Shown: positions 1 to 63,100 of the stretch, piece after piece
Layout: each line of letters opens with the position of its first letter
Numbering within the stretch: position 1 is the first letter of the stretch
Source: Macrostomum hystrix
Taxonomy: Eukaryota; Animalia; Platyhelminthes
Reading direction: 5' to 3'
Assembly (NCBI GenBank): GCA_950097015.1
Contig: CATNEN010000038.1
Location: forward strand, 2,542,001 to 2,606,000
Length of the DNA stretch: 64,000 bases
The notes under the pieces: model-generated
Seen by the model: only the letters and a program-made list of their open reading frames with translations
Databases searched by the model: none
What the model was told of the DNA's origin: nothing
Translations under genes and position numbers: made by a program

Positions 1-2
1 CT

Positions 3-908
3 ACCAGGGAATCGTGCTTCGTCGTCTGGCCCGGCGATGCGGAATCGGGGCGGCGGCTCCTCGAGTTGCTGCCCACGCAGAGCTGGGCGGCTGGCCTCGA
101 GTTCCTACGGGAGAACGAGCCACCAAAGACCAAGCGACACCGTATCTTCGTCCCGGCGAAAAGTGTCGTCACCAGCGCTGAGGACCTCCGCAGAGGCCTC
201 ATCGCGATGAACCGGGAGCTGCCGACAGCGGGCCTGATCGTGCACCGCACGATCCTGCGCCCCGACGGCACCGGTTTCACCGCCATTCTGGGCCTGTCCG
301 AGCAATGGACACGCCGCTACCCAGATGGCGCCAACATTTGCATTGGTCTGTGGAAGACCAAAATCTTCGCCTTCGAGGCGGATAAAACCCGAGGTCAGAC
401 CGGGCCCACCACCGTACCGGCCAATGAAGGGTCCTCGGACCCCAAGGCTGGGACTGGGGGCAGGGCCCAGTCGTCCCGCCAAAAAAGGCCAGAGCGTGCC
501 ATCGCTGGCAGCTCTGAGCGTCGCCCCGCGCGTGTCACAAAGCGCCGGGGCCTTCTCCAGCGGGCCTCCGAGGTGGTGCGAACCGCCAAGATGGCCCAGC
601 TGCGCGCTGAGATGCGCGGTGGCCCACCGGGGCAGGCGCCGCAACCAAGGGCTACGGGGGAGGCCTCAGAGGTGCCCAGCTCCATCGAGCAGGGCCCTTC
701 GAGCGCCCCTCCCACGGCCCAGGGAGCGGTGTCGGCTCCAGCTGAGGGCGACTCTGGGCCTGGGCTCGGGGCCGGGGGCGGGGACTGGGCGGCTGACGCC
801 GTCGAGTTCCCGTCTCCGGCTCGGGGCCTGGGCACGGAGGAGCCCATGGCTACCGACATCGACCCGGAGGAGGAGGACCGCCTTCTGGCTGGGTCCCCCT
901 CCAAGTAG
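3..908 (+). CDS. Retrotransposon ORF1 (partial, open at window start); LOA-type, DUF4780-like
   Basis: Frame open from base 3 to TAG at 908. Segment RIFVP...LRRGLIAMNRELPTAGLIV...AILGL resembles LOA ORF1 (from memory), followed by a low-complexity tail; 12 nt before ORF2. Confidence 0.75.
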   Translation, partial: TRESCFVVWPGDAESGRRLLELLPTQSWAAGLEFLRENEPPKTKRHRIFVPAKSVVTSAEDLRRGLIAMNRELPTAGLIVHRTILRPDGTGFTAILGLSEQWTRRYPDGANICIGLWKTKIFAFEADKTRGQTGPTTVPANEGSSDPKAGTGGRAQSSRQKRPERAIAGSSERRPARVTKRRGLLQRASEVVRTAKMAQLRAEMRGGPPGQAPQPRATGEASEVPSSIEQGPSSAPPTAQGAVSAPAEGDSGPGLGAGGGDWAADAVEFPSPARGLGTEEPMATDIDPEEEDRLLAGSPSK

Positions 909-920
909 ACCTCTGCCTGC

Positions 921-3900
921 ATGATGATCCCCGGAATATCATGTCTGCAAGTTAACACCCAGCACTGCGTGGCAGCATCAGTCAATCTGATGCGCACGAC
1001 AGAGCGCATGATGCCGGGCCTTGTACTTGTGCAGGAGCCCTGGCTATCAAAGAACAAGCCAAGCAACATTCCTGCTGGCTATGACTGCTTCTGCATGGCA
1101 GACTCTGTCCGCCCTAGATCACTGATCTATGCCGCAAAAGCCTTAAATGCGTGGATGAGACCCGATCTCTCTAACGGGGACATCTGCGTCATCCAATCTG
1201 CACACATTGTGCCTAACAAGTTGACCCTCGTGGCATCCGCCTACCTGGCAGGCGACGCCCCCGTGGTTAGCGATACCCTCGTCGCCCTCTGTGAATTCGC
1301 CAGGGCACGAAACTTCGAGCTGCTCCTCGCGGGAGATGTAAACTCGCATCACACCCACTGGGGTAGCTCAAAAATCAATGACCGCGGCGAAGAGCTCCTG
1401 GCCTTCGTCAGCGGCACGCCTCTAAACTTCTGCAATGTGGGCAACACGCCCACTTTCGACAATGGGCGGTGGGCTGAGGTGCTTGACGTCACCCTGGCCT
1501 CACCCGGCATCCTCCCAAGGATGCTGGGGTGGGAGGTGTGGGAGACCGAAAGCTCGCTCTCGGACCACCGTTTCATCCGTTTCAACATCGGCACCCCCGA
1601 TAAGAAGCAAAAGCCTATTTGGAGGCGTAATGTCAGAAATACCGACTGGCCCGCGTTCAGCCAAAAGCTGCATGAGGGCCTTCGGGATTCTGACCCCTCC
1701 ATGGCCATGGAAACCACGCAGGACCTGGATGGAGTGGCTGCCCTGCTGGGCGGCGCCATCACAGAGGCCTACGAAATGGCTTGCCCGCTCAAAGCCTACA
1801 AAGGCAAAAAATCGGCCCCCTGGTGGAACCCCGAGCTCGGAGTCCTAAGACGCCGAGCTAAGGCTCTCCAGAGGAAGCTGAAAACCTCGCACGACCCTGA
1901 TGACAAAGAGGCCTATACTCGCGCCATCCATGAGTTTAAGGGCCGGGTCAGAAGGGCAAAAGCGGACAAGTGGCGACAATACTGCGAAGGGCTTGAGGGC
2001 TCGCGGCCCACGGCCCGCGTGGTAAAGGCGCTCACCAACGACCGCTTCTCCAAGCTCTCATCGATTAAAAAGCCGGACGGCTCGATCACTGAGCGCCCGG
2101 AGGAAACGCTCGAGCTTATGCTAGGGCATTTCTTCCCGAGTGTACCGGCGCACTTCGGCCCAGACGACCACTCGCGTGGAGGTCAGGGCCTGGCTCAGTC
2201 ACTCGTTACGAATGACCGCATCGTTCGCGCGGCTAAGTCATTCAATCCTTTTAAAGCACCTGGGCCAGATGGTATATATCCGGCCTTTCTGCATGAAGCG
2301 GTTAAAAATGGCCGCTTCCTCCATCTCCTCTGCAGACTTCTACGGGCCTGCATCGTGCTGGGCTACGTACCAGCGCGGTGGCATGAAGCCCGGGTCGTCT
2401 TCATCCCGAAGCCCGCCAAAGGCGACTATCGCTCGGTCAAGTCTTATCGCCCGATAAGCTTGACTTCCACCTGCCTCAAGCTCATGGAAAGACTGGTGCT
2501 CTGGCGCCTTCTTACTGTAGAGCTAGGGCGGGCCCCGCTCTCACCAAACCAGCACGCCTTTCGGGCGGGCCGGTCCACGGAGAGCGCCCTCCACTGCATT
2601 GTGGAGACTCTCGAGAAGGCAGTGCTGGGCAGCGGTTTTGCCCTGGCTGTTTTCCTTGATATTGAGGGGGCCTTCGATAACGTTATTTTCGAAGCCTTTG
2701 AGAAGGCCCTGGTTTCCAGGGCCACTCACCCCCACCTCGTCCGTTGGGTCATGTACATGATCCGGAATCGCCACGTGGTGGCCCACCTCGAAGGCAGAGT
2801 GCTCTCGGCACCTGTCCTAAAAGGAGGGCCCCAAGGTGGCGTCCTCACCCCACTGCTGTGGAATCTCGTCATGGATGAGCTGCTAAAAAGCACTCGGCCT
2901 GACCCAGTCCTGAAGGTGGGATATGCCGACGATGTGACCGCCATCTGCGCGGGCCCCTCGGCGGAAACCACCAGGGACCTCATTCAGGGCTTTATCAACA
3001 GGGCGGTGCGCTGGGCGGACCAATGCGGGCTCCGACTCTCTGAGTCCAAGACCGTTGCGGTTATGTTTACCAGCAGGCTGCGCTGGACCATTGAGCCTCT
3101 GACTCTCTATGGCAAGAATATTGCCATGGAAAAGCAGGTCCGGTGCCTTGGTATCCTGCTAGACCATAGGCTTAACTGGACCCCGCACATTACCACAAAG
3201 GCCAAGAGGGCCCTGGCCATTCTGGCGCAAGTCAGGCGAGCCGTGGGCACCACTTGGGGGCTTACCCCCAAAAACCTTTGGTGGATTTACACGGCGATCA
3301 TTAGACCGTCAGTCGCTTACGCTGGCCTCATCTGGGCCAGTGCCATGAGCATCCAGAAAAACCTGGAGGCGCTTTATAGGGTGCAGGGCAGAGCCTGTCG
3401 CATGACGCTGGGCGCCCCACCCTCCACTCCCTTTGAAGGCATGAACGCTTTCCTCAACGCTACACCCATTGACATTTTTGTTAAGGGGGAAGCGGCAAAG
3501 TCCACCCGTCGTCTCCTTGATGCGGGTGTATCCTTCCAGAATTCGCGAGCCTTCTCGAAGCGCTCCCTTCTGCCCCACTCTGACCTCTGCCTGAAAACTC
3601 TGGGCGAGTGCGGAGGGCTCACCATCCTTTCGGACGGGGCCCCGGCCACTTTACTCCGGAGCCACAGGTACAAAGTCAGCATCTTCCCTCGTAATGAGGT
3701 AAAGGACTGCTGGGATGACCCCGCAGTCCACTGTTACACTGACGGCTCCCTGATGAACGGTAAATCGGGATTCGGGGTGTGCGTCGCCTCGGGTGGCGAG
3801 GTCCTCTGGACCCACTCCCAACACTGTGGCAAGAGCTCAAGCGTTTTCCAAAACGAAATGCTCGCCATCAGTTTCTGTGCGGCTGAGCTGCGCCAGAGGC

Positions 3901-4625
3901 AGCTGGCTGGTCGGAGGATCTTTTTTCACTCCGACAGTCAAGCAGCCCTCAAGGCCCTCAGTCGCTGCACCTCTCGCTCCAGAACCACCTTGGACTGCAA
4001 CACCCAGTTAAACGGTTTGGCGCAGTCTAACAAGGTGGAGCTGATGTGGATCCCTGGGCACGCCGGGCTCACAGGGAATGAGATGGCGGACGAGCTTGCA
4101 AAGGCTGGAGCAGCCAGCTCCCTGATGGGCCCGGGCCCGGAATCCCCGATCCCCGCCTCCGTTGTCAACTCCAGCATCAACCACTGGATGGAGACCCAGC
4201 ACCGGAGGAGGTGGTCCAGCACCCTGAACTGTCGCCAGTCCAGGGCTGCGGTGCCAACCCCCTCTAGTAACCTGCGTAAGGCCTTACTCAGGCTAAACCG
4301 CAGAGACCTGAGAGCAGTCACCATGGCCCTTTCGGGACATGGCTGCTTCACCAGACACCGCTACCTCCAAGGCCACGTGCCTGAGGAAACGTGTCCTTTC
4401 TGCTGCTCCGGCCGTGAAAACGCCGAGCATTTCATTTGCCACTGCCCGGCCTTCACCCGGGCTAGGCTAAAACACCTCGGGCCGGCACCGACTCTTGCCG
4501 AAGCCTGCTCGCCCGAGAACATCCCTCAGCTCGCCCACTTCCTCCGGGATACCGGCCGAGCTGATTTCTTCCCAGCCTATGGCGAGGAAGATCGCGCGGC
4601 GGAACCGACCGACGGACCACCCTGA
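921..4625 (+). CDS. ORF2 polyprotein: AP endonuclease, reverse transcriptase, RNase H, CCHC zinc knuckle
   Basis: APE: LVQEPW, GDVNSHH..WGS, DVTL, SDH. RT: [39 protein letters not shown]. RNase H: [26 protein letters not shown]. Zinc knuckle: CPFC..EHFICHC. 1234 aa, uninterrupted. Confidence 0.97.
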
Positions 4626-4812
4626 GCGGCACCGCCTCGCTGGAGGCCGTCTGGCTGCCAGGGGTTAGCGATATGGGCGGCAACAGCCGCCTCCTCGCTG
4701 CGTCCGTCATGGAGGCCCCCTGCCGCTAAGTCAAGCACTCATTAGCTTTGGCTGCCATGCACCATGATAAACCAACTGAAATCTGACACAGTTGCCCCAA
4801 CCGACTTCTCAC

Positions 4813-6565
4813 CATCAGTTCCAGGGCATCCCGGTCTTCGCAGTCCTCAGTGTGGCGCAGAATTTCCTGCAACAGCAGGCCGTACTTTGTTAGCCGCTGG
4901 AAGGGCATTGTCAGCAGCGACTTCAGCTGTAGGTCCATCGACCCGTCGCCGGAGCTGTAGTTCTTAGCGCTTGACTTCTGTGCCCACTGGATGCGATGAT
5001 CGTGATTAAGTTTCACAATTATGTCATTCACCTTTACAATTCAAAAGAAAATTGTTTACCTTGACGAAATCGTTAAAGGCCTCATTTTTCTCTAGTTGCC
5101 GCAGGTAGTCCTTACTCTCATTGATGCGCAAGCAGAAAGCCAACCCTGGCTCGAAGATCTCTTTGAAGTGCACAAATCCATCGGCGAAATCTCTCGGCCT
5201 GACGGGACCACCGGATGCGGCAGCTCGCTCCAACGCTGGTCTCAGGTGACGCATCCACAGCTCGCAATGTGAGCCCAGCACCGCAGCAATGTCCGGGAAC
5301 AGAGAGTCCGTGTTCACATCAAGCAGTAGGCTGGCGCTGGACTGCAGGTAATGAATCACCGTGATATAGGTCTGAAATATCCGAAGGAATTTGCACAGAA
5401 TATATTTTTACTGCTATGGGACTTGCGTACTTGCGTACTAAAGCACTTGCGTACTAAAGTACTTGCGTACTAAAGCACTTGCGTACTAAAGTACTGGCGT
5501 ACTAAAGTACTTGCGTACTAAAGCACTTGCGTACTAAGTACTTGCGTACTAAAGCACTTGCGTACTTAAGTACTGGCGTACTAAAGTACTTGCGTACTAA
5601 AGCACTTGCGTACTAAAGTACTTGCGTACTAAAGCACTTGCGTACTAAAGTACTTGCGTACTAAAGCACTTGCGTACTAAAGTACTTGCGTACTAAAGTG
5701 ACTAAGAAATGATTGCTGATTGTCCTTACTTCAATAATTGTCTTGAGATGTCTGAGAATGTTCAGCTCGGTCTGGCATAGTTCCCAAATTGCCGCTTGTT
5801 GGCGCACCGCCTTGCCAGTTATGGGAATCTAAATGAATTTTAGATTAGATTACATTAGATTGCTGACATAATAAGGGTACACTGGAATGTTGAAAGAAAC
5901 TTGTGAATTTGTTGAGTAACTGAAAACTGAGAATGTAACTGATCGACACTTCATGTATTAAGGTGCGCACAAGTATAAGCGAGGCTTAGGAGATTAATCC
6001 CGTAATAACCGGGTGAGGTAAGAAGAGAAGGTGGCCTTGTAAAGCCGGTTTGCATATTGAGTGGATTTTGTGTTATATTGACCAAATTTAGTGAGGATTT
6101 CGTTTGAATACTGGCTACTGAAAGAGTAAGTTGAGTAAAGGAGATGGTAAGGAAGATTGCAAATGCGAAAGAAGAGGAAGGGAGGGTGGGAGAAAAGAGA
6201 AATAGGAAAAGGGAGAACAGGAAAAGAGGGATAAGGTTAGGTGGGTGCGGAAGAGAAAATAAGAAAGAAGTGGGAAGAGGGAAAATGAAGGAGAGATAGG
6301 GGATTTCAGAAGGAGGAGTGGACGAATAGAGGCGAAGTAAGAAGAGAAGAGAGAAATAATGAAATATAGGGGTGGAGAGCAAAGGGTGAGGGTATCGAGG
6401 AGAAGAGGAGAGGCCAAATCCCAAAGCAGGTCAACCTTGTCAGTCTGAGTCCAAGCTCCGGGTGCCAAATCGGCGCAGATCTCGCTGAGCTGGTCATTGT
6501 TGTGCTTCGGCATGCCGTCCTCATCGCACTGGGTCAGGTAGTCGTGCAGTTTCTCTCGATTATCC
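4813..6565 (-). CDS. RhoGEF (DH domain), PLEKHG5/6/7-like. Exons ~6565-6436, 5828-5730, 5371-5060, 4986-4813; 3' exons lie beyond the window start
   Basis: Phase-0 GT-AG joins give ...QQAAIWELCQTELNILRHLKTIIE|TYITVIHYL...LFPDI...FNDFVK|WAQK...LQLKSLLTMPFQRLTKYGLLLQEIL, which are DH-domain motifs. Confidence 0.88.
5420..5698. repeat. Intronic 16-bp minisatellite AAG(T/C)ACTTGCGTACTA
   Basis: Direct tandem repeats filling most of a RhoGEF intron. Confidence 0.95.
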
Positions 6566-7465: not shown

Positions 7466-10400
7466 CGGAGCCGCCGGTAGAGTGCACTGGAACCGGCGGG
7501 CGGCTTTAAGGTTTCATAGAAACGCGTCCGACTTTTCCCTCTGGATATCGCTAATGAGGCCAAGATTTTCCAAGGACCTTCACCGCTGCTGATTCGCCCC
7601 GCTGAAAGGCACGAGCGCAGCCGCCTTGTCTAGGCGCAGTGTTCTGCTCGGCACACTGACCCGACTGTTTGTTGATGCAATCGGTGTTTTGACAGCTGTT
7701 TTTATTGCCTTCTGTTCTTTTTGTTTTCTGCTCTTTCATACCAGTTACTAACTCCTTCCTACCCATTAATCCGTCACTCGGTTAACCAGTCACTCGATTA
7801 GTGCACACGATTATACTAAGCAGAGAATCTAAAAGCTTGAGCATAGCCGCACTGGCTTAGAGGTGGTGAATAAGAGGTGTGTTCGGTGTGCAGCGAGCTG
7901 TTTGTGTTTTTTATCAGCTCTATTTGTTACATTAAAAAAAATAATTAGATTTATTTTTTCTATGAGACACGCTCTATTATATTGCAGTTTTTCATTTGTG
8001 AGACAATTCTCTGTTCATTTCCTCAAATCTCGGCAAGGGGGGCGTTTTTACTGCATTACCTTCCGTCAACAGACAATAAGAAGGTGGATTTTGAAGGTTG
8101 AAGGTGTTGGAGAGTTCTACTCAGCTCTAATACCTAAGCTCTCTGTAAGAACACATTCTGTTAAAAATGGGTGGCGTTAGCAACTAACCGATATGTAACG
8201 AAATATATATATCGATTTTACACAGTAAATAATTGAAGAAGTCTGGAAGTTTTTCTTGACCGAAGACCCTGTGCTGGTATGTCTAGTGAGTCTACTGCGT
8301 AAAAGGAAGGTGCCTGGCTGTGTGCACCTCGATTGATCTATTTTTAGCACATCTTGAAAATCACCCCCTCACGTGACAGCCTTCCAGCCAATGAGAGCTC
8401 GAGACCTTTAAGCACGCTAAGGTTGCATGTTTTTTATGGCAAACCCCGCCTCAGTCCCACACAGTCAGTTTTCTTTGATTGCTTGAAAAGTAAATCTGCG
8501 TAAAGTCGTTTGGCTTGCAACAGTACAACTGTTGTTAGGAGTTAGACCAGTTTTCAGTTCGCAATACATTATAATTGCCTTTTCACAGCGTCTTTAGATG
8601 TCAATTGTATCAAAAGATCTTCTCAAATCTTAGTAGCGACATTGTAGCGACAAAATTAGTGACTGCTGTATATTGAGAAACTACTTATACTGTACTACTA
8701 TGATCCTGCTATGCAGCTTTGAGCAGACAGGGAAACCAAGGCCTCCTTTTCAGTTCTTTCACAAAGGCTTTCTTATTATTGTATGCCTGCAGAAAGCGTC
8801 ACAGCAAATTTTCTGTTCCAACTTCTTTAATTATCAGCTTTTCTGCTTCTTTTTATCTTAAAACTTTTTCCACTGAAACTAATGCCACGCGATATTTCTG
8901 GGGATAAGAGCTACTGTCCTTTGTCGACTTCATGTCTGGAATACTTTTTTAAAGTTAGTCTGAGACCTTTAATTATCGAATATTTTTCATTCTGTTGTTT
9001 ACCGATGAGTTGTCGTATTTTTTACACTTCGTTTCCTGGTGAAAAGCAACTTTGAATTTGAAGGTGCATACCGATTGTGTCAATAACTTAACAATGCATT
9101 TAATACCTGAAATTTTATAACTAAGGCATTGCTTTTCGATGTTTTATTCAATCAGGTATCGATCTATTGGATCCTCTGAGTAAATATTCTGACCTATTAG
9201 ATACCGATCTATTGGTTCTGGTATATCTATATCGATCTATTGAATTCTGATCTACTGTATACAGATCTATCGGATACTGATATATCGGCCACTGACCTAT
9301 TGGACACTGATCTATTGGACACTGATCTATTGGACACTGATCTATTGGACATTGATCTATTGGACACTGGTCTATTGGACACTGGTCTATTGGACACTGG
9401 TCTAATTGATACTGATCTATTGGACACTAATCTATTGGATACTGATCTATTGGATATTGATCTTTTGGACATTGATCTATTGGACACTGATCTATGGTAT
9501 ACTATTTTTTAAATACTGAAAAATTAAAAGGCCGCTGGCTCTTAAGAAGCTGTTTACTTGTTCAGAATTAGCAAAGCTGTCTACATCCGCAGTCTTAATT
9601 TGGGTGTCATTTAGGTTAATTTTAATACGAAAAGTGGATTCTTAAGGTAGCAATTAGATCGGTGATTGACAAGGCCCAAAGCAACTACCTCCGAATTGTC
9701 GCTCGACTCCTTCGGGCCGGGGAACAGCAGAGTGAAGGAGTTGCGCCTCGGCTTGCAGCTTGACGGCGGCTTCAGGCCGCCAGATGACATCTTGGGACTG
9801 GAGCCGACTGTGATGATCTGGGGGTGGGTGTGGGGCATCAGACATTTGCTGCCCAATTGATCAATAGATTTATTCTGCCCATGATTTAATTAATCAAGCG
9901 ACTCTAATCCACCGTCAAAATTAAATCATCAGTTGAGTAGACCCGCAGCCAGCGATGAGGCAATTCTGCTCATTTCGCTGACTCCTGACTACACACGCAC
10001 ACAGATACTGTACGCAGGCACACGCTCACACAGGTGTGTACATCTGCCCTGACTTTCTAATCGTCAGGCAGTTCAACACTCTCACTGTGACTTGGAGGTT
10101 GGCCCTGAAGGGCGTAAATTGCACGACAAGCCCCCAAGCCTTCTCTCCGCGGCTGCGCCCCAAATGAATGTGGCCTCGCCGCGGAATCGAACTTAGGGGC
10201 CTCGGCGCGAGAGGCAAACGCGTTAGCCGCTCTGCCACCGACCCCTAAAAATAAATCACCAAACTGATTATAAAAAAATTATTATTGATCGCTGAATCAA
10301 AAAACCGTTCAATTAACTTATCAATCAATTAATTAATCAGTTTGATAAATAACCAATTAATCAATCAGGCAGCGAATAATTCCTTGATTTAATATCATAA

Positions 10401-12838: not shown

Positions 12839-13074
12839 GACTTGGCTGCCTTCCAGAACTGATGTCACAGCGATTGTGCCCCAGCCAATATCCCTGAACT
12901 GTTATACGGCTCTCAATGCACTAGCAGCAGCTTCCAAACTGATTGGGCAGATCGCGGGAACCAATCAGAAGCTGGCAGCTTGTCTACGTCTACTGATTTT
13001 GCTAACTCAACCTGAAGTTCTTGATTTCGGCCCTCAACACAAGGGAAACAATATCTACCTTTGATGAGCAGCCT

Positions 13075-16003: not shown

Positions 16004-16508
16004 AACTTAAAATGACACCTTTGAAGGTGGAAAATGCCGAAAATGGCCCTCCCAGCTTCTCTTGTTACGCCAGCGAAGAAGAAACTTGACCCAAAGCCTA
16101 CCTGTTCCCCCTTCTAAGGGGAAATTTTTCGTCTCATTATTCAGTCCGACGCAGACCATCATTCAACATTTTGCATCGACTGTTCGTTGTCATTTTGGCA
16201 GGCCAAAATCGGCTCATCTGTGTCAGTTGGGACATCTGTTCCATCTTTTTCTTGCCGACATCTGGACAACAGCCCTGCGCCCATTATCCGCTGCCCTCAA
16301 TCATTTCGCTTAAATATTGCCGCGCGCACAAGGACTGGGGGTTCAAAGCAATTCAGCGCTTTGCTGAAGCACAGCCTGTGTGCCATGTTTCGCTGCGTCT
16401 CGGAATTATTCCGACTCTCGCAACAAGGTCACGAGTTTGAATCTGCGGGGCAAGGCCGCATTGATTTGGAGTCAAGACTTAGCCGGATGCTTTTGTGCGC
16501 TTATCCCA

Positions 16509-30415: not shown

Positions 30416-33194
30416 CTGTTCAACAGAAACTCCAGTAGGCTCGGCAGATGAAGCAAGTCTGAGTTCTGCTCACTGACTGCTAACCAGATCGAGTGTTCCT
30501 GTCCACTTTTATCTTCTCCGCGCGATGAATCCCAGTGAGCAGAACTCAAAAAGACAGCGGGTTGGTCAGAATCCGAGATCCTCCTCTTCCCATTGTCGCC
30601 GAAATCCCACTGGCTGTTGTTTTGCAATCCACTCTCCAACCATGAAGGTCCTGAGCTCGAATCCAAGGCAAGGCCACATTTTTGAGGCAACCAAAACCCA
30701 TGAGGGCCAACTCTTCAGGGATCAGAAAGTGCCATCAAACCTTCCCCATCTCTCACCCCCTTCCCCATCTCTCACCCCCTTCCCCATCTCTCACCTTCTT
30801 CCCCATCTCTCACCTTCTTCCCCATCTCTCACCCCTTCCCCATCTCTCACCCCTTCCCCATCTCTCACCCCTTCCCCATCTCTCACTCATTCTCCATCTC
30901 TCACTCCTTCCCCATCTCTCACCCCTTCCCCATCTCTCACTCATTCTCCATCTCTCACTCCTTCCCCATCTCTCACCCCTCCCCCATCTCTCACCTTCTT
31001 CCCCATCTCTCACCTTCTTCCCCATCTCTCACTCATTCTCCATCTCTCACTCCTTCCCCATCTCTCACCCCTCCCCCATCTCTCACCTTCTTCCCCATCT
31101 CTCACTCCTTCCCCATCTCTCACCCCTCCCCCATCTCTCACCTTCTTCCCCATCTCTCACCTTCTTCCCCATCTCTCACCTTCTTCCCCATCTCTCACCT
31201 TCTTCCCCATCTCTCACCCCTTCCCCATCTCTCACCCCTTCCCCATCTCTAATCTCCTTACACTCTACTCCCAGTTTGTAACACCCTTGTCTAACACAAG
31301 GACTACTAGACTATAACGACGTATTCCAGTGGTCCTTGGTCTAACAGGCTTCAGTTTGTAACACCTTTGTCTAACAGACCCCCAGTTTGTAACACCCTTG
31401 TCTAACAGACCCCCAGTTTGTAACACCCTTGTCTAACAGACCCCCAGTTTGTAACACCCTTGTCTAACAGACTCTCAGTTTTTAGTCGTTTCAGTACGGT
31501 TAGTCTCGCTGCTATGTATTGATTAGTAACCAAGGCTATTATGCTGAAAATTGTTTATACTATTTTGAGTCATATTCGTTTTTCATTACTATATCTTCTG
31601 CACGTGAGGAGAGAGAGAGAGATAGAGCTGCTCAATCCTTTGCCGCAAAAACATTTTTATGTTGCCACAATATTTTCGCCTCCACCCACTAGCCGCATTC
31701 GGGAGATAATCTAGACAATTCTTTGGATCTACCCGATAGGACTCGCGCCTTTAATCCCCGAATGCATAGTCGCTGCTCCTCCCACTGGGATAGCCGGAAT
31801 GATTGGCAATTTTCCACAGGTTAGAGCCGGCTACAGGATTGGTGACAAATCAATTTTAGGCCTCTGGGCTGCCCACCCACGGTGAAGCCCCGTGTCCCTT
31901 GAATGCCAGGCAGTGCGCACGAATTGCTGTATTTATACTGCGGATGCTCAATTTTCCTGTGATCCCGAACCGGCGCATAAAAAATGTGCTGCGCTTTACT
32001 AACAAAAATTGCAAGTTTTTAACGACAAAATGTTTATAGATTACAATTGATCCAAACGGACGGAGATGTCACGATATATAAAATCAATAAAGTTTAAAAT
32101 AAACAAATCAATTCTAACTTACCGCTGATGAACGAATAAATCAACTTAAATATGCTTGTTATCGTCTGGTGCAAACAGTCATAAAATAAGTACAAACTAG
32201 AGCAGCAAAAAACATTTTCAAAAATAGCTAGAAACAGCCTTAAATATTGTTTTTCTTTGCTGAGGCACGTATTTAAAAAAGTTAAACATTTTCAGTCTGG
32301 TCAGGCTGCAGTGCAGTCTCAATCTCACCTGCTCTCTCCTTCTACCTATCTCTTACCTCCGTCTCCCTCATCTCACCTCACCTCATCTCATCCCTCAGAG
32401 GCCACATTCATTTAAGGCGCAGCCGCGGAGAGAAGGCTTGTGGGCTTGTCATGCAATTTACGCCCTTGAGTGCGAACCTCCAAGGCCAAGTGAAAGTGTG
32501 CACTGCCTGACGATGAGAAAGTCAGGGCAGATGTACACACCTGTGTGAGCGAGTGCCTGCGTACAGTATCTGTTCAGGAGTCAGTGAAATGGGCAGAATT
32601 GCCTCCTCGCTGGCTGCGGGTCTAGTGTCAACAAATGATGTGCCATTGCCTGCAGCTCTCCTGCAATTATCATTATCTCTATTACCCCTTCTCCCCGTCT
32701 CTCACCTGTGATCTCCGTTTTCTCTAAAATATTTGCCGCCAGATCTCACCCTGCCAGACTGTAGAATCAGTTTGAGCAGTCGCGAATTCCCGCCAGTCCC
32801 AGTTGTGGATTCCTGGAGCACGGGAGCCTCCTGAATAGGCTTTTCCTTGTCCGTGAGCAGTTGCGGATCTTGCTGCTGCTGCTGCTGCTGCCGCAGCTGG
32901 CGTTGCACCTGGCCATGCAATGCCTTCACGCACTCCATACTCTGAGCCCACCTGGCGTGACTCCGCCATTTCGCCAGGTCTGAGGATGCCTTCAAATTCG
33001 AGCATCGATCTTCAGACTGAAAAAAAGTATATAATATATGAATACTTGCAAATAGCACTACTATCTCAGTAATATGAATAGGACTTCTCGCTAGAAGTTT
33101 TTCAAATTTCAAATTATGCCAATTAGCAGATCAACTCACCGCCAAGGGTTCCGGCATGATGTGCTCGGCGACTGGACTCAGTTTATTTGCCTCC
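30416..33194 (-). CDS. Unidentified multi-exon gene candidate (exons ~33194-33140, 33016-32706, 31926-31881, 31830-31733, 30712-30416)
   Basis: Five GT-AG bounded segments join in one open frame (EANKLSPVAEHIMPEPLA|SEDRC...QQQQ...GDHS|NSCALP...|PALTCGK...|GVGPHGFWLPQKC...). No recognisable domain; start and end not found. Confidence 0.45.
30742..31250. repeat. 18-19-bp pyrimidine-rich minisatellite CCCCATCTCTCACC(C/T)(C/T)TT
   Basis: Tandem units. Confidence 0.9.
31271..31480. repeat. Short array of the ~29-bp AGTTTGTAACACC(C)TTGTCTAACAG repeat
   Basis: Same unit as the 33250 array. Confidence 0.9.
31297..31338. mobile_element. 42-bp micro-element with 10-bp TIRs and 8-bp TSD GTCTAACA
   Basis: gtctaaca|CAAGGACTAC...GTGGTCCTTG|gtctaaca, interrupting a minisatellite unit whose empty form is present in neighbouring units. 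Confidence 0.75.
32398..32670 (+). mobile_element. SINE family 1, 5'-truncated copy
   Basis: Body and 3' structured tail match the other copies. Confidence 0.88.
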
Positions 33195-37306: not shown

Positions 37307-40209
37307 TTCTCTATAATCAGACTGGTCAAAGCCCGCACGACTACGAATGCCTCCTAAGTGACGGCGCTAGGTGAGATTAATTGCTGTCTGACACTCACCC
37401 AGTTCAGTCTGACACTCACCCAGTTCAGTCTGACACTCACCCAGTTCAGTCTGACACTCACCCAGTTCAGTCTGACACTCACCAAGTTCAGTCTGATACT
37501 CACCCAGTTCAGTCTGACACTCACCCAGTTCAGTCTGACACTCACCCAGTTCAGTCTGACACTCACCCAGTTCAGTCTGACACTCACCCAGTTCAGTCTG
37601 ACACTCACCCAGTTCAGTCTGACACTCACCCAGTTCAGTCTGACACTCACCCAGTTCAGTCTGACACTCACCCAGTTCAGTCTGACACTCACCCAGTTCA
37701 GTCTGACACTCACCTAGTTCAGTCTGACACTCACCCAGTTCAGTCTGACACTCACCCAGTTCAGCCTGACACTCACCCAGTTCAGCCTGACACTCACCCA
37801 ATTCAGTCTGACACTCACCCAGTTCAGTCTGACACTCACCCAGTTCAGTCTGACACTCACCTAGTTCAGTCTGACACTCACCCAGTTCAGTCTGACACTC
37901 AGCCAGCTCAGTCTGACACTCAGCCAGCTCAGTCTGACACTCACCCTTGATCTCCTGTTTCCCAGCGCCCCGGCCGACGCCAAGCGTGAGAAGTCACGTG
38001 ACGCCGCTCGCCACAGGCGCGGCCGCGAGAACCTGGAATTCTTGGCCGTCGCCCGCCTGCTGCCGCTGCACCCGGAGATCGCCCGCCAACTGGACAAGGC
38101 CTCCGTCATCCGGCTGGCCGTCAGCTTCCTGAAGCTGCGCCAGCTGGCGAGATGCGGCCAGCCCAGCTGGTCACCGGAGAAACCTCAGGGCGACGACAAG
38201 GCGGAAACGGCCGACCTCGGCGGCCTCATTCTGCAGGCGGTTGACGGCTTCCTGTTGATCCTGGGCACCGACCTGACCATCCTGTACATCTCTGAGACTG
38301 TGTCCATTTTCCTTGGCCAATCACAGGTGGATATGACTGGCAATGATCTGATTGGCTATGTACACTCGGCCGATCACGCAGAACTCATCGATCACACGGA
38401 CAGACTGATGGGACGGGCCGGAGCCTGCAAGGAGCACGGTGAGTAGACTCAATCATTCAGTGATGAAGGATAGTGGGTAGCAGGTGAGTAGACTCAATCA
38501 TTCAGTGATGAAGGATAGTGGGTTGCAGGTGAGTAGACTCAATCATTCAGTGATGAAGGATAGTGGGTTGCAGGTGAGTAGACTCAATCATTCAGTGATG
38601 AAGGATAGTGGGTTGAGAACGTGAGATGTAACATGAGTACGATAGTCCACAATGTTACTGTTTGCAGCTCTGGACATGGAGAACATTTGTGTTCGCCTGC
38701 GCTCCAACCTTGGCAAACGCAACGCCCAGGTGCCAATCTCTGGCTATAGGGTAAGTAGTCATTCGATAGTCAACCTCACAAGGACTACTTAAAGTAGATT
38801 GATAAGAAAGACGCAGTTCGTGGATTTCCCATTTTCCCAACTTCAACTCGCTATGAACAACACAATGGATAAATTCGGCTTTAAAAACTCAATTTCCAAA
38901 CTTGTAAGCTGCAAGGCCTGGCTTGTCTGACTATTCCAGACAGTGCAGCTTCACTGTCAACGCCGCGTGGACTCAACCAGCGGCCAGCCGCTAGGCCTGG
39001 TTGCCTTGGCAACCGCCCTGCCATCGCTGGCGCTGAGCGAGCTCTACCTGCCAGTGAACACCTGCGTCCTGAGGCTGGATGAGAAATTCTGCATCGTGCT
39101 GGGAGACTCAAGGCAAGCCATGAGAAATGAGAAATGAGAAATGGTTGAGAACCCCGCACAATAGACACCGTTCTAATCCTGACTAATCATCGTGTTGCAG
39201 CAAGCACTCCTGCCAGGAATTGAGCGTGACCGTGCCCTCCTCGCTGTACCAGTACATCTTCCCGCAACACCTGGAAGCATTGCGGTGTGCTCATCGCGAC
39301 GGTGAGTCCAATTTTCGTAAATCTTGGACCCTTCCTGGATTTGGATTTCCTGTGACCAACTCGTGCCTCAAAAGGAACTTATCTTTATCTGGATTAGGAG
39401 TTCCCTATACACTCCCAAGATTAAAAGCTGATAAAATGGTTGTAGCTTATAATAATTGCAGGAGGGCTGCAGGCAATGGCACATCATTTGGTGACACTAG
39501 ACCCGCAGCCAGCGAGGAGGCAATTCTGCCCATTTCGCTGGCTCCTGAGCTCACACGCTCACACAGGTGTGTACATCCGCCCTGACTTTCTCATCGTCCG
39601 GCAGTGTACACTCTTTCTTTGCCTTGAAGGTTGGCCCTCTAGGGCGTAAATTTCATGACAAGCCCCCAAGCCTTCTCTCCGCGGCTGCGCCCCAAATGAA
39701 TGTGGCCTCGCCGCGGAATCGAGTTTAGGGACTGCGGTGGGTGCGTGAGGCAAACGCGTTAACCGCTCTGCCACCGATGATATAATCATATAATAATATG
39801 ATTTTTTATTGTTGTAGCTCAGTTTATATTGACGAAATCACGACTTGAAGGCCGGGTATTCGATTCCCGAATTAGCTGTTACAATTTGTGTCCTGTATCA
39901 AGACAATACAGGACATTGCTACATTGCTTCAGTTTACCCGGCTGTAAAATTGGTAGCAGCATTAGCTGGGGTAATTGAAGGTGGGTGTGGGGTCTTCACA
40001 GTCCATGGACTGAACAGCCGTACGCAGCCATCAGATGCGCGGCGCAATAGCTGCGGCTGTGCTTGTCGGCTGCACATCTGACCCAATCGGGGCAGGTGTA
40101 ATTAACTATTTTCATTGTTAATCCATTCCTGGATTAAGGTTAAGCCATAATCTGATGTTTCAGTGATGAAGCTTGGCCAGACCCTCACTCTGCCAGTGGG
40201 CTGGATGCC

Positions 40210-48945: not shown

Positions 48946-50061
48946 TAATAATAATAATAATAATTGCAGGACGGCTGCGGGTAATGACACATCATTTTCA
49001 ATGTTTTCATTAGACCTGCAGCCAGCAAGGAAGCAATTCTGCCCATTTCACTGACTCCTGAGCACACACACACACACACAGATACTGTATGCAGGCATAC
49101 GCTCACACAGGTGTATACATCTGCCCTGACTTTCTCATCATCAGACAGTGTATAGGGTAATGTATCATCAACCGAACAAATACTTCAAACCTAAGCTACA
49201 GATTTTCTATTTAAGATATCATGATAAATCAAAAGCCAAGTTATAGAAAACTGTTTTGTCTTTCTAAATAGTATCTGCTTTTGCAATTTTGTCAAATAGA
49301 AAAAAGTTATACATGTTTTTCATCTTAAACCAAACAATGATTTTCATGTATCTTCAAACCAAACAGAGAATTTGATGTTCAGTTTTAAAATTTGAGTGAG
49401 TGGTTTAATCTTATTTTAAGCAGTGATCTATCATGAATTGTCATTTGAAAGCATTTTTCATGCTCTATAAATAACTACATTTATGGTAATTTAATTGGAA
49501 AGCAACCACATACAATCTTAGTCTAAAGTACATGCTGAAAAAATGCTGTCAAAAAGTATGCTTTTGTGATAAAAAATTTTACTGAAACATCCATATCTTT
49601 CTTTCCTTTTAATGCTTCATTGCATGTCATGCCTTAGCTTCTAAATAATTTCATTGACATTCAAAATAGTTGTTCTGTGAAATATAATAGCTTGTTTCTG
49701 TCTTGCACAAGACCAAGGAAGGAGTCAAAATTCTTGTTCGGTTTTGAAGATACACTGTTTGGTTGATGATACATTATCCTACCATAGTCAGGAAGGTGTC
49801 CTATACGTTGGAAAATTCCAGCGTGCATTTACATTAGATAACTTTTGGCGTACATTATTGGCGTGCAAATTTTGGTAAAGTGTATACTTCACTGTGTCTT
49901 GGAGGTTGGCCCTCAAGGGTATAAATTGCACAACAAGCCCTAAAGCCTTCTTTCTGCAGCTGCGCCCCAAATAAATGTGACCTCACTGTGGAATTGAACT
50001 TAGGGACCATGGTGCGAGAGGCAAATGCAATAGGCCTAACCACTGGCACCACTGACCCCCC
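48946..50061 (-). mobile_element. SINE family 1 copy interrupted by a TIR element
   Basis: 3' half at 48946-49154 and 5' half at 49879-50061 are collinear with the other copies. Confidence 0.85.
49155..49779. mobile_element. Non-autonomous DNA transposon (MITE) with ~24-bp TIRs, TA-flanked
   Basis: ta|GGGTAATGTATCATCAACCGAACA ... TGTTTGGTTGATGATACATTATCC|ta; subterminal copies of TCTTCAAACCRAACA; AT-rich interior. Confidence 0.85.
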
Positions 50062-54100: not shown

Positions 54101-57100
54101 ATTCAGGACGATGACGCCATTTTGAAGCATTTGGACGCATTCAGCGCCAGGCTACGACAGTTCCTCGATGTGCAGGTGATTAGCAAATAAATTAACATAC
54201 CCCATCCCAGACTGCATTCCGTACCCATCCCACACTGCATTCCGAACCCAATCCCACACCACATTCCGTACCCCATCCCAGACTGCATTCCGTACCCAAT
54301 CCCACACCGCATTCCGTACCCCATCCCACACTGCATTCCGTACCCCATCACACACTGCATTCCGTACCCCATCCCAGACTGCATTCCGTACCCCATCCCA
54401 CACCGCATTCTTTACCCAATCCCACACCGCATTCCGTACCCCATCCCACACCGCATTCCGTACCCCATCCCACACCGCATTCCGTACCCAATCCCACACT
54501 GCAGGCCTCGCTGAGCCAGATGTTCCGCCTGGTGCACACTGCCCGCAAGCTGCCCCGGCCGCGCAAGGAAGACCTGGAGATGGACGACTTGGAAGCCGCC
54601 TCCGCTGCCACCACTGCAACTTCCGCCGCAACGGCCGCAGCCGCAGCCGCTTCTTCTGCCGCAGCCGCTGCAGCTGCTCCAGCAGGCGGTGGTCACCTGG
54701 AAGCCATCGAGGAGGACAATGAGCAGCAGAGTTTGTCATTGGAAGGTGATGATCATCATCAGCAGCAGCAGCAGCAGTCTGCACAGGGCACCCCGCACGA
54801 CGCCGCCAATGACGAGGAGCTTCTCAGAAGCATCGCTCTCATGCGTGAGTTCTAGCCCATGTCTGTTCGATTGTTATCTCTCTTTTTATCGCTTTCGTGT
54901 TATCTCTTGTCGCCGAACGAAGTTTGCCTTTTCTTCAGTACTTGCCATCAGCATCTATGAACTGCGAAACTCTTTATTTATCTTTCAGAAATGCTCCACA
55001 CTCTAATGTAAGTAGCATTCTGTTAAATATGCACTCTAAAATGTACTTTTCACCGATAAAAATGCATGCCCTTTGTGTATGCAGAATCTTTACTATTCGG
55101 AGCATTAATAATAACTCCAAATTATTTGTCACGTGATCATTCGAATCAAGCACGGTGAAAAATGCCACACAAGGACTTCTTGGATATAACAAACGCTTTA
55201 AATATTGTCTTGAGCTTGCAGCCCCTGTGGTTTAGGCATAGGACTTCTGACCTGGAGTTCAAAAGCAATCTGTGTCCTTGAGGCACTTCAAAAATTCCTA
55301 GTGCTTTAGTTTACCAGGTTGTAAAATGGATGCCAGCATTAGCTGGGTTAGAAAGGATTGGTCGATCCAGTCGATACCATGGGAAGGACTGGGGTGAGTT
55401 GTCTCTGCGTTTATAGTGACTGGATAAACCAGTTATTGATTTCAGTTGGTTCTAGACTTATTTACTATTTCTCCATCAGTTCAGTGAAAAACATTGCTGA
55501 ATTTCGAAACTTTCCCAGGCAAATATTACGATTCCGAAGGCGAGGGCCCGAGCTTCAGTGGTGTTGTGAAGTCCTTCACTGATCGGGCAACTCGCCGACT
55601 CCAGGACAGCATCAGCACTAGCAGCTTGCTGGATGTGGAGAGCAAGGACAAGGAGAAGTTCACTGATGTCTACCGAGGCTTTGTGGACACGCTGAGCGAG
55701 CTGGAACAGTTCGCATCGGCCTACGTGCACACCATCTTCCAGTGGAAGTTCTACCCACAGGTAGGTTAACACTGTGTCCTGTTTCTGGGGGCGACAGATG
55801 CAATCACCGACTTACTCACCACACACCACAAAACACGCACCAGACACCAGACCACACAACACATAACACACAACACACACGGCACATCATAAACCACACA
55901 GCTCACCATAAACCACACAGCACACACCACACCACACGAAACACGCACACCAAAACATTGTGGCGTACAACGTAGAGCATTTAGCGCAGAGTGCTCTAGA
56001 CATTGAAAGTCGTGAATACTTCAGTTTTATTTTCAATCTTCACTAGCTATCGTTTGCGTAGTGCTCACGAAACATTGGTACTGTAGAACTGTACACGTCA
56101 TACTACCCGCAGGAGGCGCTGGACATTCTCCAGGCCCTGTCACCGATTGGTCATCGGCCGGCTGTGAAAGCTGCCCTGGCCGACAAGTTCGTGGAGATCT
56201 TTGGCCAGTTTGAGGAGCATCTGAACGACATCCGTCGGCTGTACGAGGAGGGCAAGACCGCTCCGCCGCGGGTGCGCAACTCGCCCCCAGTAGCGGGCGC
56301 CGTCAACTGGTCCAGGCAACTGCTCAAGCAGATTGAGGAGCCAATGAAGGTGAGCCATTGAGCACACTTTAGTTTGAGCTGTTCAGTTGACAACTACTAC
56401 GAGCGTAATTGTGAGGCAGAAATGCGAGGGGGTCAGTGGGAGAGCGGTTAACGCGTTTGCCTTTGACGCACCAAGGTCCCTGAGCTCGATTACTCGGCGA
56501 GGCTACATTAAGGCTTGGGGGGCTTGTCATGCAGTTTACGTCCTTGAGGGCCAACCTTCAAGGCACAGTGAAAATGTACACTGCCTGAAGATGAAAAAGT
56601 CTGGGCAGATGTTCACACCTGTGTGAGCGAGTGCCTGCTGTGTGCGTGTATGCTCAATAGACAGTGGAATGGGTGGAATTGCTTCCTCGCTGGCTGCGGG
56701 TCTAGTGTCACCAAATGATGTGCCATTGCCCGCAGCCCTCCTGCAATATTCATTATTATTATTCGGCAGAAATACTGTGGGTCTATGTACTTAAAAAACT
56801 GAAAATGGTTGCGTCGCAGGTGTTTCGCGACAACCCGGATGTAACCAGCCAGCTGGACTACCCGCGCATCGTCAAGATGTACAACAAGGTGGCCACCGCG
56901 CTAGCCGCATTCGAACAACTCTACCTGACTCAGTGGCGCTCTCAGATTGAAATAGCCAAGACTTCGCTGAACGCCACTCTGTTCGTGCGACACCCGGTGA
57001 CACGGGAGCTCATGGTCAATTTGGATGAGAAGGTGAGCAAGCAATGGCCACCTTTAGTAGTTTGATTTACGTCACAGTGGGGTGTACATCCGGCCTGAAA

Positions 57101-60100: not shown

Positions 60101-63100
60101 TACGACTTCCTGTGGAAGGACAACCTGCCCACCAACCTGGGCGACTTCCTGGCCAGCCAGCCCAGCAACGGCATGCTCAGTCTGGAGGTCGACCGTCTGA
60201 TGGCTGTGGAGGACCGAGTCAACGGCCTGAAGCCAGAGTACTCGTTCGGCTGCGTGCAGCTGCAGACGCAGAAAGCTGTCGACGTGCTTCAGGGCTTCGT
60301 CCTGACCTGGAAGGAGGCCTTCGCCTCCGAGCTGCACAGCCGGGTGCGCCAGGAGCTCCAGGACGCCGTGGGCTATCGAACTCGGCAGGAGCGCGAGTTG
60401 TGTCATCTAGAGCATCAGCTGAACCCGGAGCTGGCGTCTGGCAGCGACGCCGGCGTTGGAGGCGGTGGCGTCAAAGGCCGGGTGACGCTTGACGACCTGA
60501 ATGTTGCCCTAAAACTTCTTGAGGAGCTTCGAGACATGGAGAACAAGGTGGACAAGATCTACCTGCCCATTGAGACCATGTACGCCAGGCTGCAATCCTA
60601 TAAGCTCAGCCTGCCTCGCTCGGAGATCGAAGAGTGCCACGGCCTGCGTGACAACTGGCTGAGGCTGACTAAACTAGCCGACCAGGTGCGAATGCAACTG
60701 CTCAAGGATCACCGCAGCCACTTTGAGCAGGAGTTAGACAAGCAGGTCAAGAACTTCGTGGTCGAGGTCATCCAGTTTCGCAATCAGTTTGACGCTCAGG
60801 TAATTAATTTAGAGCCTCTTTTTATAGCCTAGTTTAATCCACTGTCACGAGTGTCAATAAAGGCCACGGAACATTGCCGGAACATCACGAATTTTTTTTT
60901 CTGCATTATTTCAGTCTCATTGTTGGATAAGTTGTTTCGTTATTAATATACATGCTAGTTAATATTTCTGCCCTTGCTGCATATTAGGGGGCGATGGTAG
61001 AGCGCGTAACGCGATTGCCTCTCGCACCAAAGTCCCTGCGCATGATTCCGCGACAAGACCACATTCATTTGGGGCGCAGCCGCGGAGAGAAGGCTTGCGG
61101 GCTTGTCTTGCAATTTACGCCCTTCAGGGACAACCTCCAAGGCACAGTAAGAGTGTACACTGCCTGACGATGAGAAAGGCAGGGCAGATGTACACACCTG
61201 TGTGAGCGTGTGCCTGCGTACGGTATCTGTGCGCGTGTGTGCTCAGGAGTCAGCGGAATGGGAAGAATTGCTTCCTCGCTGGCTGCGTGTCTAGTGTCAC
61301 CAAATCGTGTGCCATTGCCCGCAGCCCTCTTGCAATTATTATTATTTTTTAATTGCTGCACATTTTGCAGGGTCCGTTCGTCCCAGATATCGAGCCGTTG
61401 GACGCAGTGAAACGCCTGCACAGATTCCAAGAAGTCTACGACCTGCACAGTCGCAAACGCCAGACCCTGGACTCGGTCAGCAAGTTGTTCGGCATTGTCA
61501 CTCGCCAGTTCGACGAGCTGGACCGCACTGGCGAGGAGCTGGTGCTGCTGAATCTCCTGTACGACCTGTTCCAGAAGTTCATCAGATTCGAAGAGAACTT
61601 TAGACAAGAGCTCTGGGAGGACGTCGACTTAGACCGGACTGTCAGTGAGGTCGAAGGATACTGGGACGAGAGCTTGGCGCTGCCCAGCAAACTGCGCGGC
61701 TGGGCTGCCCACCTGGACATGAAGGCGCGCATGCAGCGCTACCGGATGATGCTGCCACTGCTGAAGAAGCTTAAGTCAAAGGTCTGTGAGCTTGAAATTT
61801 ATTAATTCAAACCAGTGATCGGGTCAATCGATATTTGATATTAAAACTTCGCTGCTACCGCTGTGGCTGCGATAGAATCAGCGTGAGCGTTGTTTGTTTT
61901 GTGGCAGCAGTGGTGGATGTTGGTTGTGCGTTGGCTGTAGGGTTGGGTGTGTGACTTTGTGTTCGTTCTCCGGCGACAGAAAAATAGGTTGGGTGTTTGT
62001 TTGTTTTCAGGTGGCTGTGAAATGGGGTGGATGTTTGTTCTGCTACGGCTGCGACATGGGTGGATGTTTGTTTAGCGGTGGCTGTGAAATGGGGTCGATA
62101 TTTGTTTACCAGTGGCTGTGAAATGGGGTCGATATTTGTTTAGCGGTGGCTGTGAAATGGGGTCGATATTTTTTTAGCGGCGGCTGTGAAATGGGGTAGA
62201 TGTTTGTTTAGCGGTGGCTGTGAAATGGGGTGGATGTTTGCGATGCGTCGGCTGTAAAATGGGGTGGATGTTTGTTTAGCGGTGGCTGTGAAATGGGGTG
62301 GATGTTTGCTCTGCGGCGGCTGTGAAATGGGGTGGATGTTTGTTTAACGGTGGCTGTGAAATGGAGTGGATGTTTGCTTTGCGGCGGTTGTGAAATGGGG
62401 TGGATGTTTGTTTAGCGGTGGCTGTGAAATGGAGTGGATGTTTGCTTTGCGGCGGTTGTGAAATGGGGTGGATGTTTGTTTAGCGGTGGCTGTGAAATGG
62501 AGTGGATGTTTGTTCTTCGGCGGCGGAGTGGGGTGGGTGATAATCTGTAGAGGTGATGGAATATTTTGGCTTTTGGCCCGCCGCAGGGCTGGCACCGGGT
62601 GGTTGTCTGTCTGCGGCGGCGGTGGATTCGGTGAATCAGCTGCAAAAGTCGAGTGGGACTTCTGATTTGATTATCAGAAGCTTTACAAGTAACTTTAGTG
62701 CTTTACATGAAATTCGTGCTTCAAATAGTGCCTTTCACATGCCTATTGTTTGAGAGCTAAAAGAATAGAGCACAGATTTTAGTCAGATTCGCACAAACTA
62801 ACGTGCTTCTTGACTCGTCATCTTTCAAGCCTAACTGACTTCGCTCACATCCGCGCTTCGCTGCCCCACCTGACTTTCAGCGAATCCCCTGGCTAGAATC
62901 CGTGAGCCAAAAATGGAGAGGCTCAAATTTTTCTGTTGCAATATTCACCCAGAGTACATTTTTTTCTTTTAACTCGCTCACTTGGTGGCGGCAATGTTTT
63001 GTGGAATTAAAACTAAATGGAGGTATGGGATTTTGTAACTTTCCAAAATCTAATGATGATAATTAGTGCTATGTCAGGTCACCAGGTAATTTGATACTGC

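What the first reader, a model, noticed from the sequence alone, without database searches (positions are those of the whole stretch)
4659..4722. Structured 3'-terminal RNA motif shared by the LOA-type LINE and SINE family 1, with a compensatory change
Seen: the LINE 3' UTR reads CAGGGG-TTAGCGA-TAT-GGGC(GGCAACAGCC)GCCT-CC-TCGCTG-[hairpin TCCGTCATGGA]-GGC-CCCCTG-C. The SINE 3' ends (e.g. 39547-39459 minus, 32575-32663, 61244-61332) read CAGGAG-(T/C)CAGCGA-AAT-GGGC(AGAATT)GCCT-CC-TCGCTG-[hairpin GCTGCGGG...CCYGCAGC]-C-CTCCTG-C. Both fold as a three-way junction. The closing helix covaries (CAGGGG/CCCCTG vs CAGGAG/CTCCTG), the AGCGA-WAT-GGGC / GCCT-CC-TCGCT internal loop is conserved, and the apical loop and second hairpin differ freely. 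Established: many SINEs borrow the 3' end of a partner LINE for RT recognition. Inference: this is the ORF2 recognition element of a LOA/R1-type LINE family with a tRNA-SINE passenger, a pairing I do not recognise as described. The tails differ (TAAGTCAAG vs (ATT)n), so the direct partner may be a sister LINE family.
Basis: partly seen in the sequence, partly recalled or inferred. Interest (0 to 1): 0.85.

Follow-up and report, generated by a model that had tools for sequence, protein, structure and literature searches.

The report
Shared Y-shaped LINE/SINE 3' RNA module
A young jumping gene (LINE) of a Macrostomum-like flatworm ends in a conserved Y-shaped RNA fold placed just before its repeat tail, and an older short parasitic repeat (SINE) carries a copy of that fold, which is the classic way SINEs borrow a LINE's copying enzyme: a well-supported new example of a known kind.

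Summary
Window 4659-4722 folds as a three-way junction, 4 nt upstream of a (TAAGTCAAG)n tail. It closes an intact endonuclease-RT-RNase H LINE. The SINE tails carry a homologous P1-P2 core.

At least eight sister LINE families in the same genome keep the module, although the four compared ORF2s are only 60-75% identical. So does a distant clade of metagenomic LINEs (30-36% ORF2 identity). Across these, 95.6% of cells pair, six pairs change on both sides, and one G.U pair is invariant. In 22 of 32 non-redundant related LINE 3' ends the best fold is a junction abutting the tail; 3.7 are expected.

The module is most likely the ORF2 recognition element for target-primed reverse transcription. That function is inferred, not shown.

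The window's LINE is probably not the SINE's direct partner:
- The SINE ends in (ATT)n.
- SINE copies are 85-92% alike, while LINE copies are identical.
- Whole-genome patterns found no hybrid tails and no LINE with a SINE-type tail.

The LOA/R1 clade and the tRNA origin of the SINE head could not be verified. I-clade LINE/tRNA-SINE pairs are already published. This scan also noted the same module elsewhere in this genome. Verdict: new member of a known kind.

The parts
1..908 (+). ORF1-like frame of the LINE. It is cut by the window start (the listed ORF is 66-908). No Pfam domain and no CCHC knuckles.
921..4625 (+). Intact ORF2 of 1234 aa: AP-type endonuclease, reverse transcriptase, RNase H and a C-terminal CX2CX8HX4C motif.
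4626..4658 (+). Upstream part of the 3' UTR. It is poorly conserved between sister families (18-71% identity).
4659..4722 (+). Three-way-junction module. P1 is 4659-4664 with 4717-4722. P2a is 4667-4671 with 4695-4699. The 5' bulge UAU is 4672-4674 and the 3' CC is 4693-4694. P2b is 4675-4681 with 4686-4692, based on an invariant G.U pair. The apical loop is 4682-4685. P3 is 4700-4716.
4723..4735 (+). Linker CCGC plus one TAAGTCAAG tail unit. Most genomic copies have two units. The element ends at 4735.
39449..39777 (-). Full-length SINE copy of about 329 bp, with module 39459-39547 and an (ATT)n tail.
32398..32678 (+). 5'-truncated SINE copy, with module 32575-32663.
60984..61342 (+). SINE copy, with a mutated module at 61244-61332.
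56518..56747 (+). 5'-truncated SINE copy, with a degenerate module at 56655-56743.
9930..10248 (-). SINE copy with the best-kept head. The module is broken after P2 (model hit 9930-9987).
48967..49152 (-). SINE fragment with a weak model hit at 48967-49060.

Best explanation
Window 4659-4722 is the 3'-terminal recognition module of a group of 'stringent-type' non-LTR retrotransposons. These carry endonuclease, RT and RNase H, and live in a Macrostomum-like flatworm genome.

The LINE transcript folds into a Y-shaped three-way junction with these parts:
- a closing helix P1;
- a hairpin P2 with an A/U-rich 3-nt 5' bulge;
- an invariant G.U pair at the base of the inner stem of P2;
- a variable hairpin P3.

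The junction lies 4 nt upstream of the (TAAGTCAAG)n tail. The inferred mechanism is that ORF2 protein binds this fold, which places the tail repeats at the nicked target DNA, so that reverse transcription starts there. Ragged and slipped tail ends fit that picture.

An older SINE with a Pol-III-box head captured the P1-P2 core, with its own long P3 and an (ATT)n tail. It was probably mobilised through the core by a related LINE lineage that is no longer visible as an intact family, not by the window's LINE.
For: Shown, LINE activity:
- ORF2 is intact, with endonuclease, RT and RNase H.
- The family is very young: at least 40 copies are 100% identical over the last 176 nt.

Shown, conservation of the module:
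- The module abuts the tail in every copy read.
- 433 exact module+tail ends in the genome show at least eight P3 variants or families.
- Between families A-D, ORF2 proteins are 60-75% identical.
- P1-P2 is 79-90% identical at nucleotide level. The last 300 coding nt are 48-76% identical and the upstream UTR 18-71%.

Shown, covariation on 22 sequences:
- 95.6% of cells pair, against 44-55% when the partners are slid.
- Six pairs change on both sides.
- 0 of 500 shuffles reach the observed score.
- The G.U pair is invariant.

Shown, wider relatives:
- In 22 of 32 non-redundant related LINE 3' ends the best fold is a junction abutting the tail; 3.7 are expected.
- Related organisms' contigs hold the module with another P3 and the same tail. 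The one variant seen inside the module is in the apical loop.

Shown, SINE homology. The SINE core is nearest families A and B, at 77-79%.

Established knowledge: stringent LINEs need their 3' UTR, and SINEs share it (PMC3747384, PMC4176376).
Against: - No binding, expression or mobilisation data exist. All runs found were contigs, none on record as RNA.
- The SINE tail repeat differs from every LINE tail seen.
- No LINE with a SINE-type tail was found.
- The nearest metagenomic ORF2 relatives (L055, L057, L070) show no obvious module.
- The covariance model does not reach the more diverged LINEs.
- The metagenomic 'core' sequences form one tight clade, so independent lineages are few.
Confidence: 0.72

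Rival explanations
1. The window's LINE family, or its living sisters A-D, is the SINE's current direct partner. ORF2 would recognise the junction alone and tolerate any tail repeat.
For: The P1-P2 core is shared, and is 77-79% identical to families A and B. The LINE families are evidently active.
Against: SINE copies are only 85-92% alike, with none near-identical among the best 40 of at least 2092 candidates. Across the whole genome, no SINE end carries a TAAGTCA tail. Only one chance-like LINE end carries an ATT tail.
Confidence: 0.1
2. The module serves another step of the LINE life cycle, such as 3'-end formation, RNA stability, export or packaging with ORF1 protein, rather than RT recruitment. 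The SINE would profit from that step.
For: Only position and conservation are shown. Nothing ties the fold to ORF2 directly.
Against: The module lies at a fixed 1-4 nt from the repeat where reverse transcription must begin, in many lineages with different tails. This is the arrangement of tested stringent LINEs (PMC3747384, PMC4176376). No ribozyme or other Rfam family matches.
Confidence: 0.13
3. The LINE/SINE likeness is chance or convergence between G+C-rich hairpins.
For: The LINE-only model gives a modest E of 0.026 for the best single SINE copy, and it covers P2 only.
Against: A 24-base exact pattern is shared with 0 expected. The same register recurs in every SINE copy. P1 is 5/6 identical with a compensated change, and the module lies at the extreme 3' end in both elements.
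Confidence: 0.03

Closest known systems
UnaL2 LINE / UnaSINE1 of eel (L2 clade), the tested model of stringent 3'-tail recognition
   Same: A conserved 3' structure lies just upstream of a short tandem-repeat tail. A SINE carries it, and the tail repeats are thought to allow slippage at initiation (PMC3747384, PMC4176376).
   Different: UnaL2 has a single stem-loop, not a three-way junction. It belongs to a different LINE clade without RNase H. There the LINE and SINE share the same tail repeat; here they do not. The Rfam search, whose library I recall includes a UnaL2 3' element family, gave no match.
Gecko tRNA-SINE with MosquI / I-74_AAe (I clade) of Aedes aegypti
   Same: A SINE with a Pol III head borrows the tail of an I-type LINE with tandem-repeat ends (Table 1 of PMC3747384).
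   Different: The host is an insect, not a flatworm. I could not compare sequences or folds because the original paper is not held. Here the SINE and the living LINEs have different tail repeats.
3' UTR elements of I factor (TAA)n, SART1/R1Bm and R2
   Same: The 3' UTR and terminal repeats are needed for precise initiation (PMC3747384). Structured RNA is recognised by the element's own protein (PMC10499050, PMC11194090, by title and abstract only).
   Different: No sequence or model match. R1 and R2 elements are site-specific, whereas these LINEs sit at many unrelated sites.

Membership tests
LINE/SINE pair with a shared 3' tail (stringent type) | A conserved element at the extreme 3' end of the LINE, next to the tail repeats | tested here: met
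LINE/SINE pair with a shared 3' tail (stringent type) | A homologous sequence at the 3' end of the SINE | tested here: met
   P1-P2 only; P3 differs.
LINE/SINE pair with a shared 3' tail (stringent type) | The same terminal repeat on the LINE and the SINE (direct partnership) | tested here: not met
   The LINE has (TAAGTCAAG)n and the SINE has (ATT)n. No hybrids genome-wide. No LINE with a SINE-type junction.
LINE/SINE pair with a shared 3' tail (stringent type) | ORF2 protein binds the element and needs it for retrotransposition | not testable with these tools
   Needs binding and mobilisation assays.
Structured RNA element (conserved fold) | Base pairs kept through compensatory changes in independent lineages | tested here: met
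   Caveat: there are few independent lineages.
LOA or R1 clade of non-LTR retrotransposons | The RT domain groups with reference LOA or R1 elements in a phylogeny | not tested
   No reference sequences were available. PDB and Atlas hits give no clade.
RNase-H-bearing I-type LINE group (I, LOA, Nimb, Tad1, Ingi; from my own knowledge of the classification) | Domain order AP endonuclease, RT, RNase H | tested here: met
R1 clade | Insertion at one specific target sequence | tested here: not met
   Unrelated flanks at 53 copies.
tRNA-derived SINE (SINE2) | The head is recognisable as a tRNA | tested here: inconclusive
   ARAGORN finds none. Rfam at E up to 10 finds none in two heads. A-box-like TGGCAGAGCGG and B-box-like GTTCGATTCC lie at tRNA spacing by eye.
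Known Rfam families, including hammerhead and other three-way-junction ribozymes and LINE 3' elements | A match to the family's covariance model | tested here: not met

The most novel reading that the evidence does not exclude
The Y-shaped module is an old recognition RNA shared by a large branch of RNase-H-bearing LINEs across invertebrate phyla. It has a closing helix, a hairpin with an A/U-rich 5' bulge over a G.U-based GGGCC/GGCC stem, and a free third hairpin, all abutting the tail. On this reading it is recognised by shape while the tail repeat is free to change. It is absent from Rfam and could be used as a covariance model to predict SINE partners in poorly studied animals.
Probability: 0.4. 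Interest if true: 0.55.

Novelty: new member of a known kind. Interest (0 to 1): 0.4.

Why it matters
It gives a well-defined RNA element for a LINE group that is clearly active in a flatworm genus where transgenesis is possible (from my own knowledge of Macrostomum lignano). The element is about 60 nt, supported by covariation, and has an invariant G.U pair and a conserved bulge. RT-template recognition could therefore be tested directly.

It also supplies a model for annotating LINE 3' ends and their SINE passengers in invertebrate genomes. The concept itself, a SINE borrowing a LINE tail, is textbook.

Tried and rejected
- **Known RNA families.** Rfam gathering and E-value scans found no known family, ribozyme or LINE element.
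- **tRNA origin of the SINE head.** Not detected by ARAGORN or Rfam.
- **Preference for tandem repeats as targets.** 20 of 53 junctions lie in minisatellites, but 36% of the window does too, so there is no preference.
- **(ATT)n-tailed partner LINE.** Protein searches with four distant ORF2 queries returned only TAAGTCAAG-tailed families. Whole-genome patterns for hybrid tails, for short-P3 modules with an ATT tail, and for an ORF2 anchor followed by a SINE-type junction found only deleted SINE copies or one mutated family-A copy.
- **Extending the covariance model.** It does not reach the more diverged metagenomic LINEs; they share architecture, not sequence.
- **Clade assignment.** PDB and the ESM Atlas were uninformative.
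- **Expression.** No RNA run was on record, and contigs cannot show transcript ends.
In full-UTR folds the junction is the best fold or lies within 1.5 kcal/mol of it.
- **Tool limits.** Family E and other ORF2 hits could therefore not be read, and I did not try fetch from genomes.

Full report
**What is at the site.** Upstream of the motif lies an intact 1234-aa ORF (921-4625). It has an AP-type endonuclease, a reverse transcriptase and an RNase H domain. Before it is an ORF1-like frame cut by the window start. The element ends at 4735.

**The tail.** Genomic copies show that the true 3' end is a tandem 9-mer, (TAAGTCAAG)n. Most copies have exactly two units; some have ragged or slipped ends. 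The window copy has one unit. The motif therefore lies 4 nt upstream of the tail.

**Host and family age.**
- The window's assembly is 220 Mb in 42 contigs.
- The closest named ORF2 relatives are Macrostomum lignano proteins, at 56-73% identity. The host is therefore probably a Macrostomum-like flatworm.
- The family is very young. At least 40 copies are 100% identical over the last 176 nt, out of 392 candidates.

**The fold.** Alone, 4659-4722 folds as a three-way junction (-36 kcal/mol, z -3.7). The SINE tails fold the same way. In the complete 3' UTR the junction is the best fold for families A, B and one C copy. It is within 0.5 kcal/mol for another C copy and within 1.5 kcal/mol for D. 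Its parts are:
- P1: 4659-4664 with 4717-4722.
- P2a: 4667-4671 with 4695-4699.
- 5' bulge UAU (4672-4674) opposite CC (4693-4694).
- P2b: 4675-4681 with 4686-4692, closed at its base by a G.U pair.
- Apical loop: 4682-4685.
- P3: 4700-4716.

**Sister LINE families in the same genome.** Searching the genome with distant ORF2 proteins brought in three more families, B, C and D. All have open ORF2 frames, and each has several near-identical copies. Further hits could not be read.
- Their ORF2 proteins are 60-75% identical to each other and to family A.
- All carry the module and the same 9-mer tail.
- P1-P2 is 79-90% identical at nucleotide level between families. The last 300 coding nt are 48-76% identical, the upstream UTR 18-71%, and P3 47-71%.
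- P2a changes from AGCGA/UCGCU (family A and the SINE) to AGCGG/CCGCU (B, C, D), a compensated change.
- P3 differs in sequence but is always a hairpin.
- A whole-genome exact pattern found 433 module+tail ends. It revealed at least three more P3 variants and an abundant family-A variant with a G.U in P1.

**More distant LINEs.** I collected 80 metagenomic loci encoding ORF2 relatives at 29-36% identity.
- Many of their 3' UTRs end in microsatellite tails of various units, such as AGGTA, GAAGA, CAT, CAA, ACAA, AAT and CTAAT. Directly before the tail lies a junction of the same build.
- One clade has the near-identical core GCGC-AUU-GGGCC...GGCC-UCA-GCGC.
- Others keep the architecture with different helix sequences. 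Their P2a 5' strands include GACAC, GAGAC, CGAAA, GGCAC, GAGUAC and GGC.
- In 22 of 32 non-redundant 3' ends the best fold is a three-way junction abutting the tail. Dinucleotide shuffles predict 3.7.

**Covariation test.** I aligned 22 sequences: families A-D, four SINE copies and twelve metagenomic LINEs.
- The 16 pairs of P1, P2a and P2b are 95.6% paired, against 44-55% when the partners are slid.
- Six pairs change on both sides.
- No shuffle of 500 reaches the observed score.
- The G.U pair at the base of P2b never varies.

Caveats on breadth:
- In an ORF2 tree the metagenomic 'core' LINEs are one tight clade, and it is not sister to the Macrostomum clade.
- The nearest metagenomic relatives of the Macrostomum LINEs show no obvious module.
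- A covariance model does not reach the more diverged forms.

The module is therefore recurrent in this LINE group, not universal, and independent lineages are few.

**The SINE.** It is about 329 bp long, with at least 2092 candidate copies. The best 40 are only 85-92% identical to the window copy. It is therefore much older than the LINE bursts.
- Its tail holds P1 (CAGGAG/CUCCUG, with one compensated change), the P2 core with a different loop, a much longer P3, and (ATT)n.
- A LINE-only model, run without filters, puts SINE tails as the three best non-LINE hits in the window. These cover P2 only, with E 0.026 to 0.69.
- The shared 24-base pattern is not expected by chance.
- The SINE core is closest to families A and B (77-79%) and less close to the metagenomic LINEs (54-67%). 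It therefore comes from the local LINE lineage.
- A tRNA origin of the head is not confirmed. Only box-like words are visible.

**Who moves the SINE.** Exact patterns over the whole genome gave these counts:

| Pattern | Hits |
|---|---|
| SINE end followed by the LINE tail | 0 |
| LINE P1 followed by ATT repeats | 1, chance-like |
| Short-P3 module with ATT tail | 17, all looking like SINE copies with deletions |
| Conserved ORF2 anchor followed by a SINE-type P2/P3 junction | 1, a mutated family-A copy |

Within the reach of exact patterns there is no living LINE with the SINE's tail. The donor is probably an extinct or decayed sister lineage.

**Related organisms.** Contigs of public runs from other coded organisms hold the same module. 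One shows another P3 (also present in this genome) and the same TAAGTC tail. The only variant inside the module is in the apical loop, at 4685. No run is on record as RNA, so expression is not shown.

**Comparison with what is known.**
- Stringent LINEs need their 3' UTR, and SINEs copy it (PMC3747384, PMC4176376).
- A tRNA-SINE with an I-clade LINE tail, Gecko with MosquI/I-74_AAe, is tabulated in PMC3747384.
- SINE3-1_TC is said to be moved by I-clade LINEs (PMC7245038).
- My paper searches found no description of this particular junction, nor of SINEs in Macrostomum. The library is partial.
- No Rfam family matches.

**Earlier notes of this scan.** The scan has noted the same module several times on other DNA of this genome. 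Follow-up agents judged it a new example of a known kind. My tests agree with that.

**Verdict.** This is a new member of a known kind, of moderate interest.

Noticed in passing
window 12938-22000 and the flanks of L002-L054: The genome is very rich in minisatellites. 36% of the window lies in tandem repeats of period 7 or more, including long 20-nt and 29-nt arrays. 20 of 53 LINE junctions lie in such arrays, which is no more than this background.
   Followed up: yes
L028, L043 and L044, just after the LINE tail: Three of 53 LINE 3' junctions abut SINE sequence directly. In L043 a 5'-truncated SINE in the same orientation follows the tail. This could be a nested insertion or a template-switch chimera. 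Given the SINE density in the window (9 copies in 64 kb), the excess is not significant.
   Followed up: partly
window 1-908; L031, L043, L047 upstream of ORF2: The ORF1-like proteins of families A-D share a conserved block (...FTAILGLS..W...). They have no CCHC zinc knuckles and no Pfam match (Pfam was scanned on family A only). That seems unusual for I-type LINEs, from my own knowledge.
   Followed up: no
G000, rows (e.g. C1:3212469, C1:5708092, C1:9991659): Further LINE families have other P3 hairpins, plus an abundant family-A variant with U in place of C in the 3' strand of P1.
   Followed up: partly
G000, rows: Seventeen SINE copies have internal deletions that shorten P3 to LINE-like length while keeping P1 and the ATT tail.
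   Followed up: no
L055 3' UTR (about 4800-5121): The nearest metagenomic relative of the Macrostomum LINEs ends in tandem units of about 75 nt, each holding a strong hairpin (GGAGGCGGTCCGG...GGACCGCCCC), instead of the junction plus a microsatellite.
   Followed up: no
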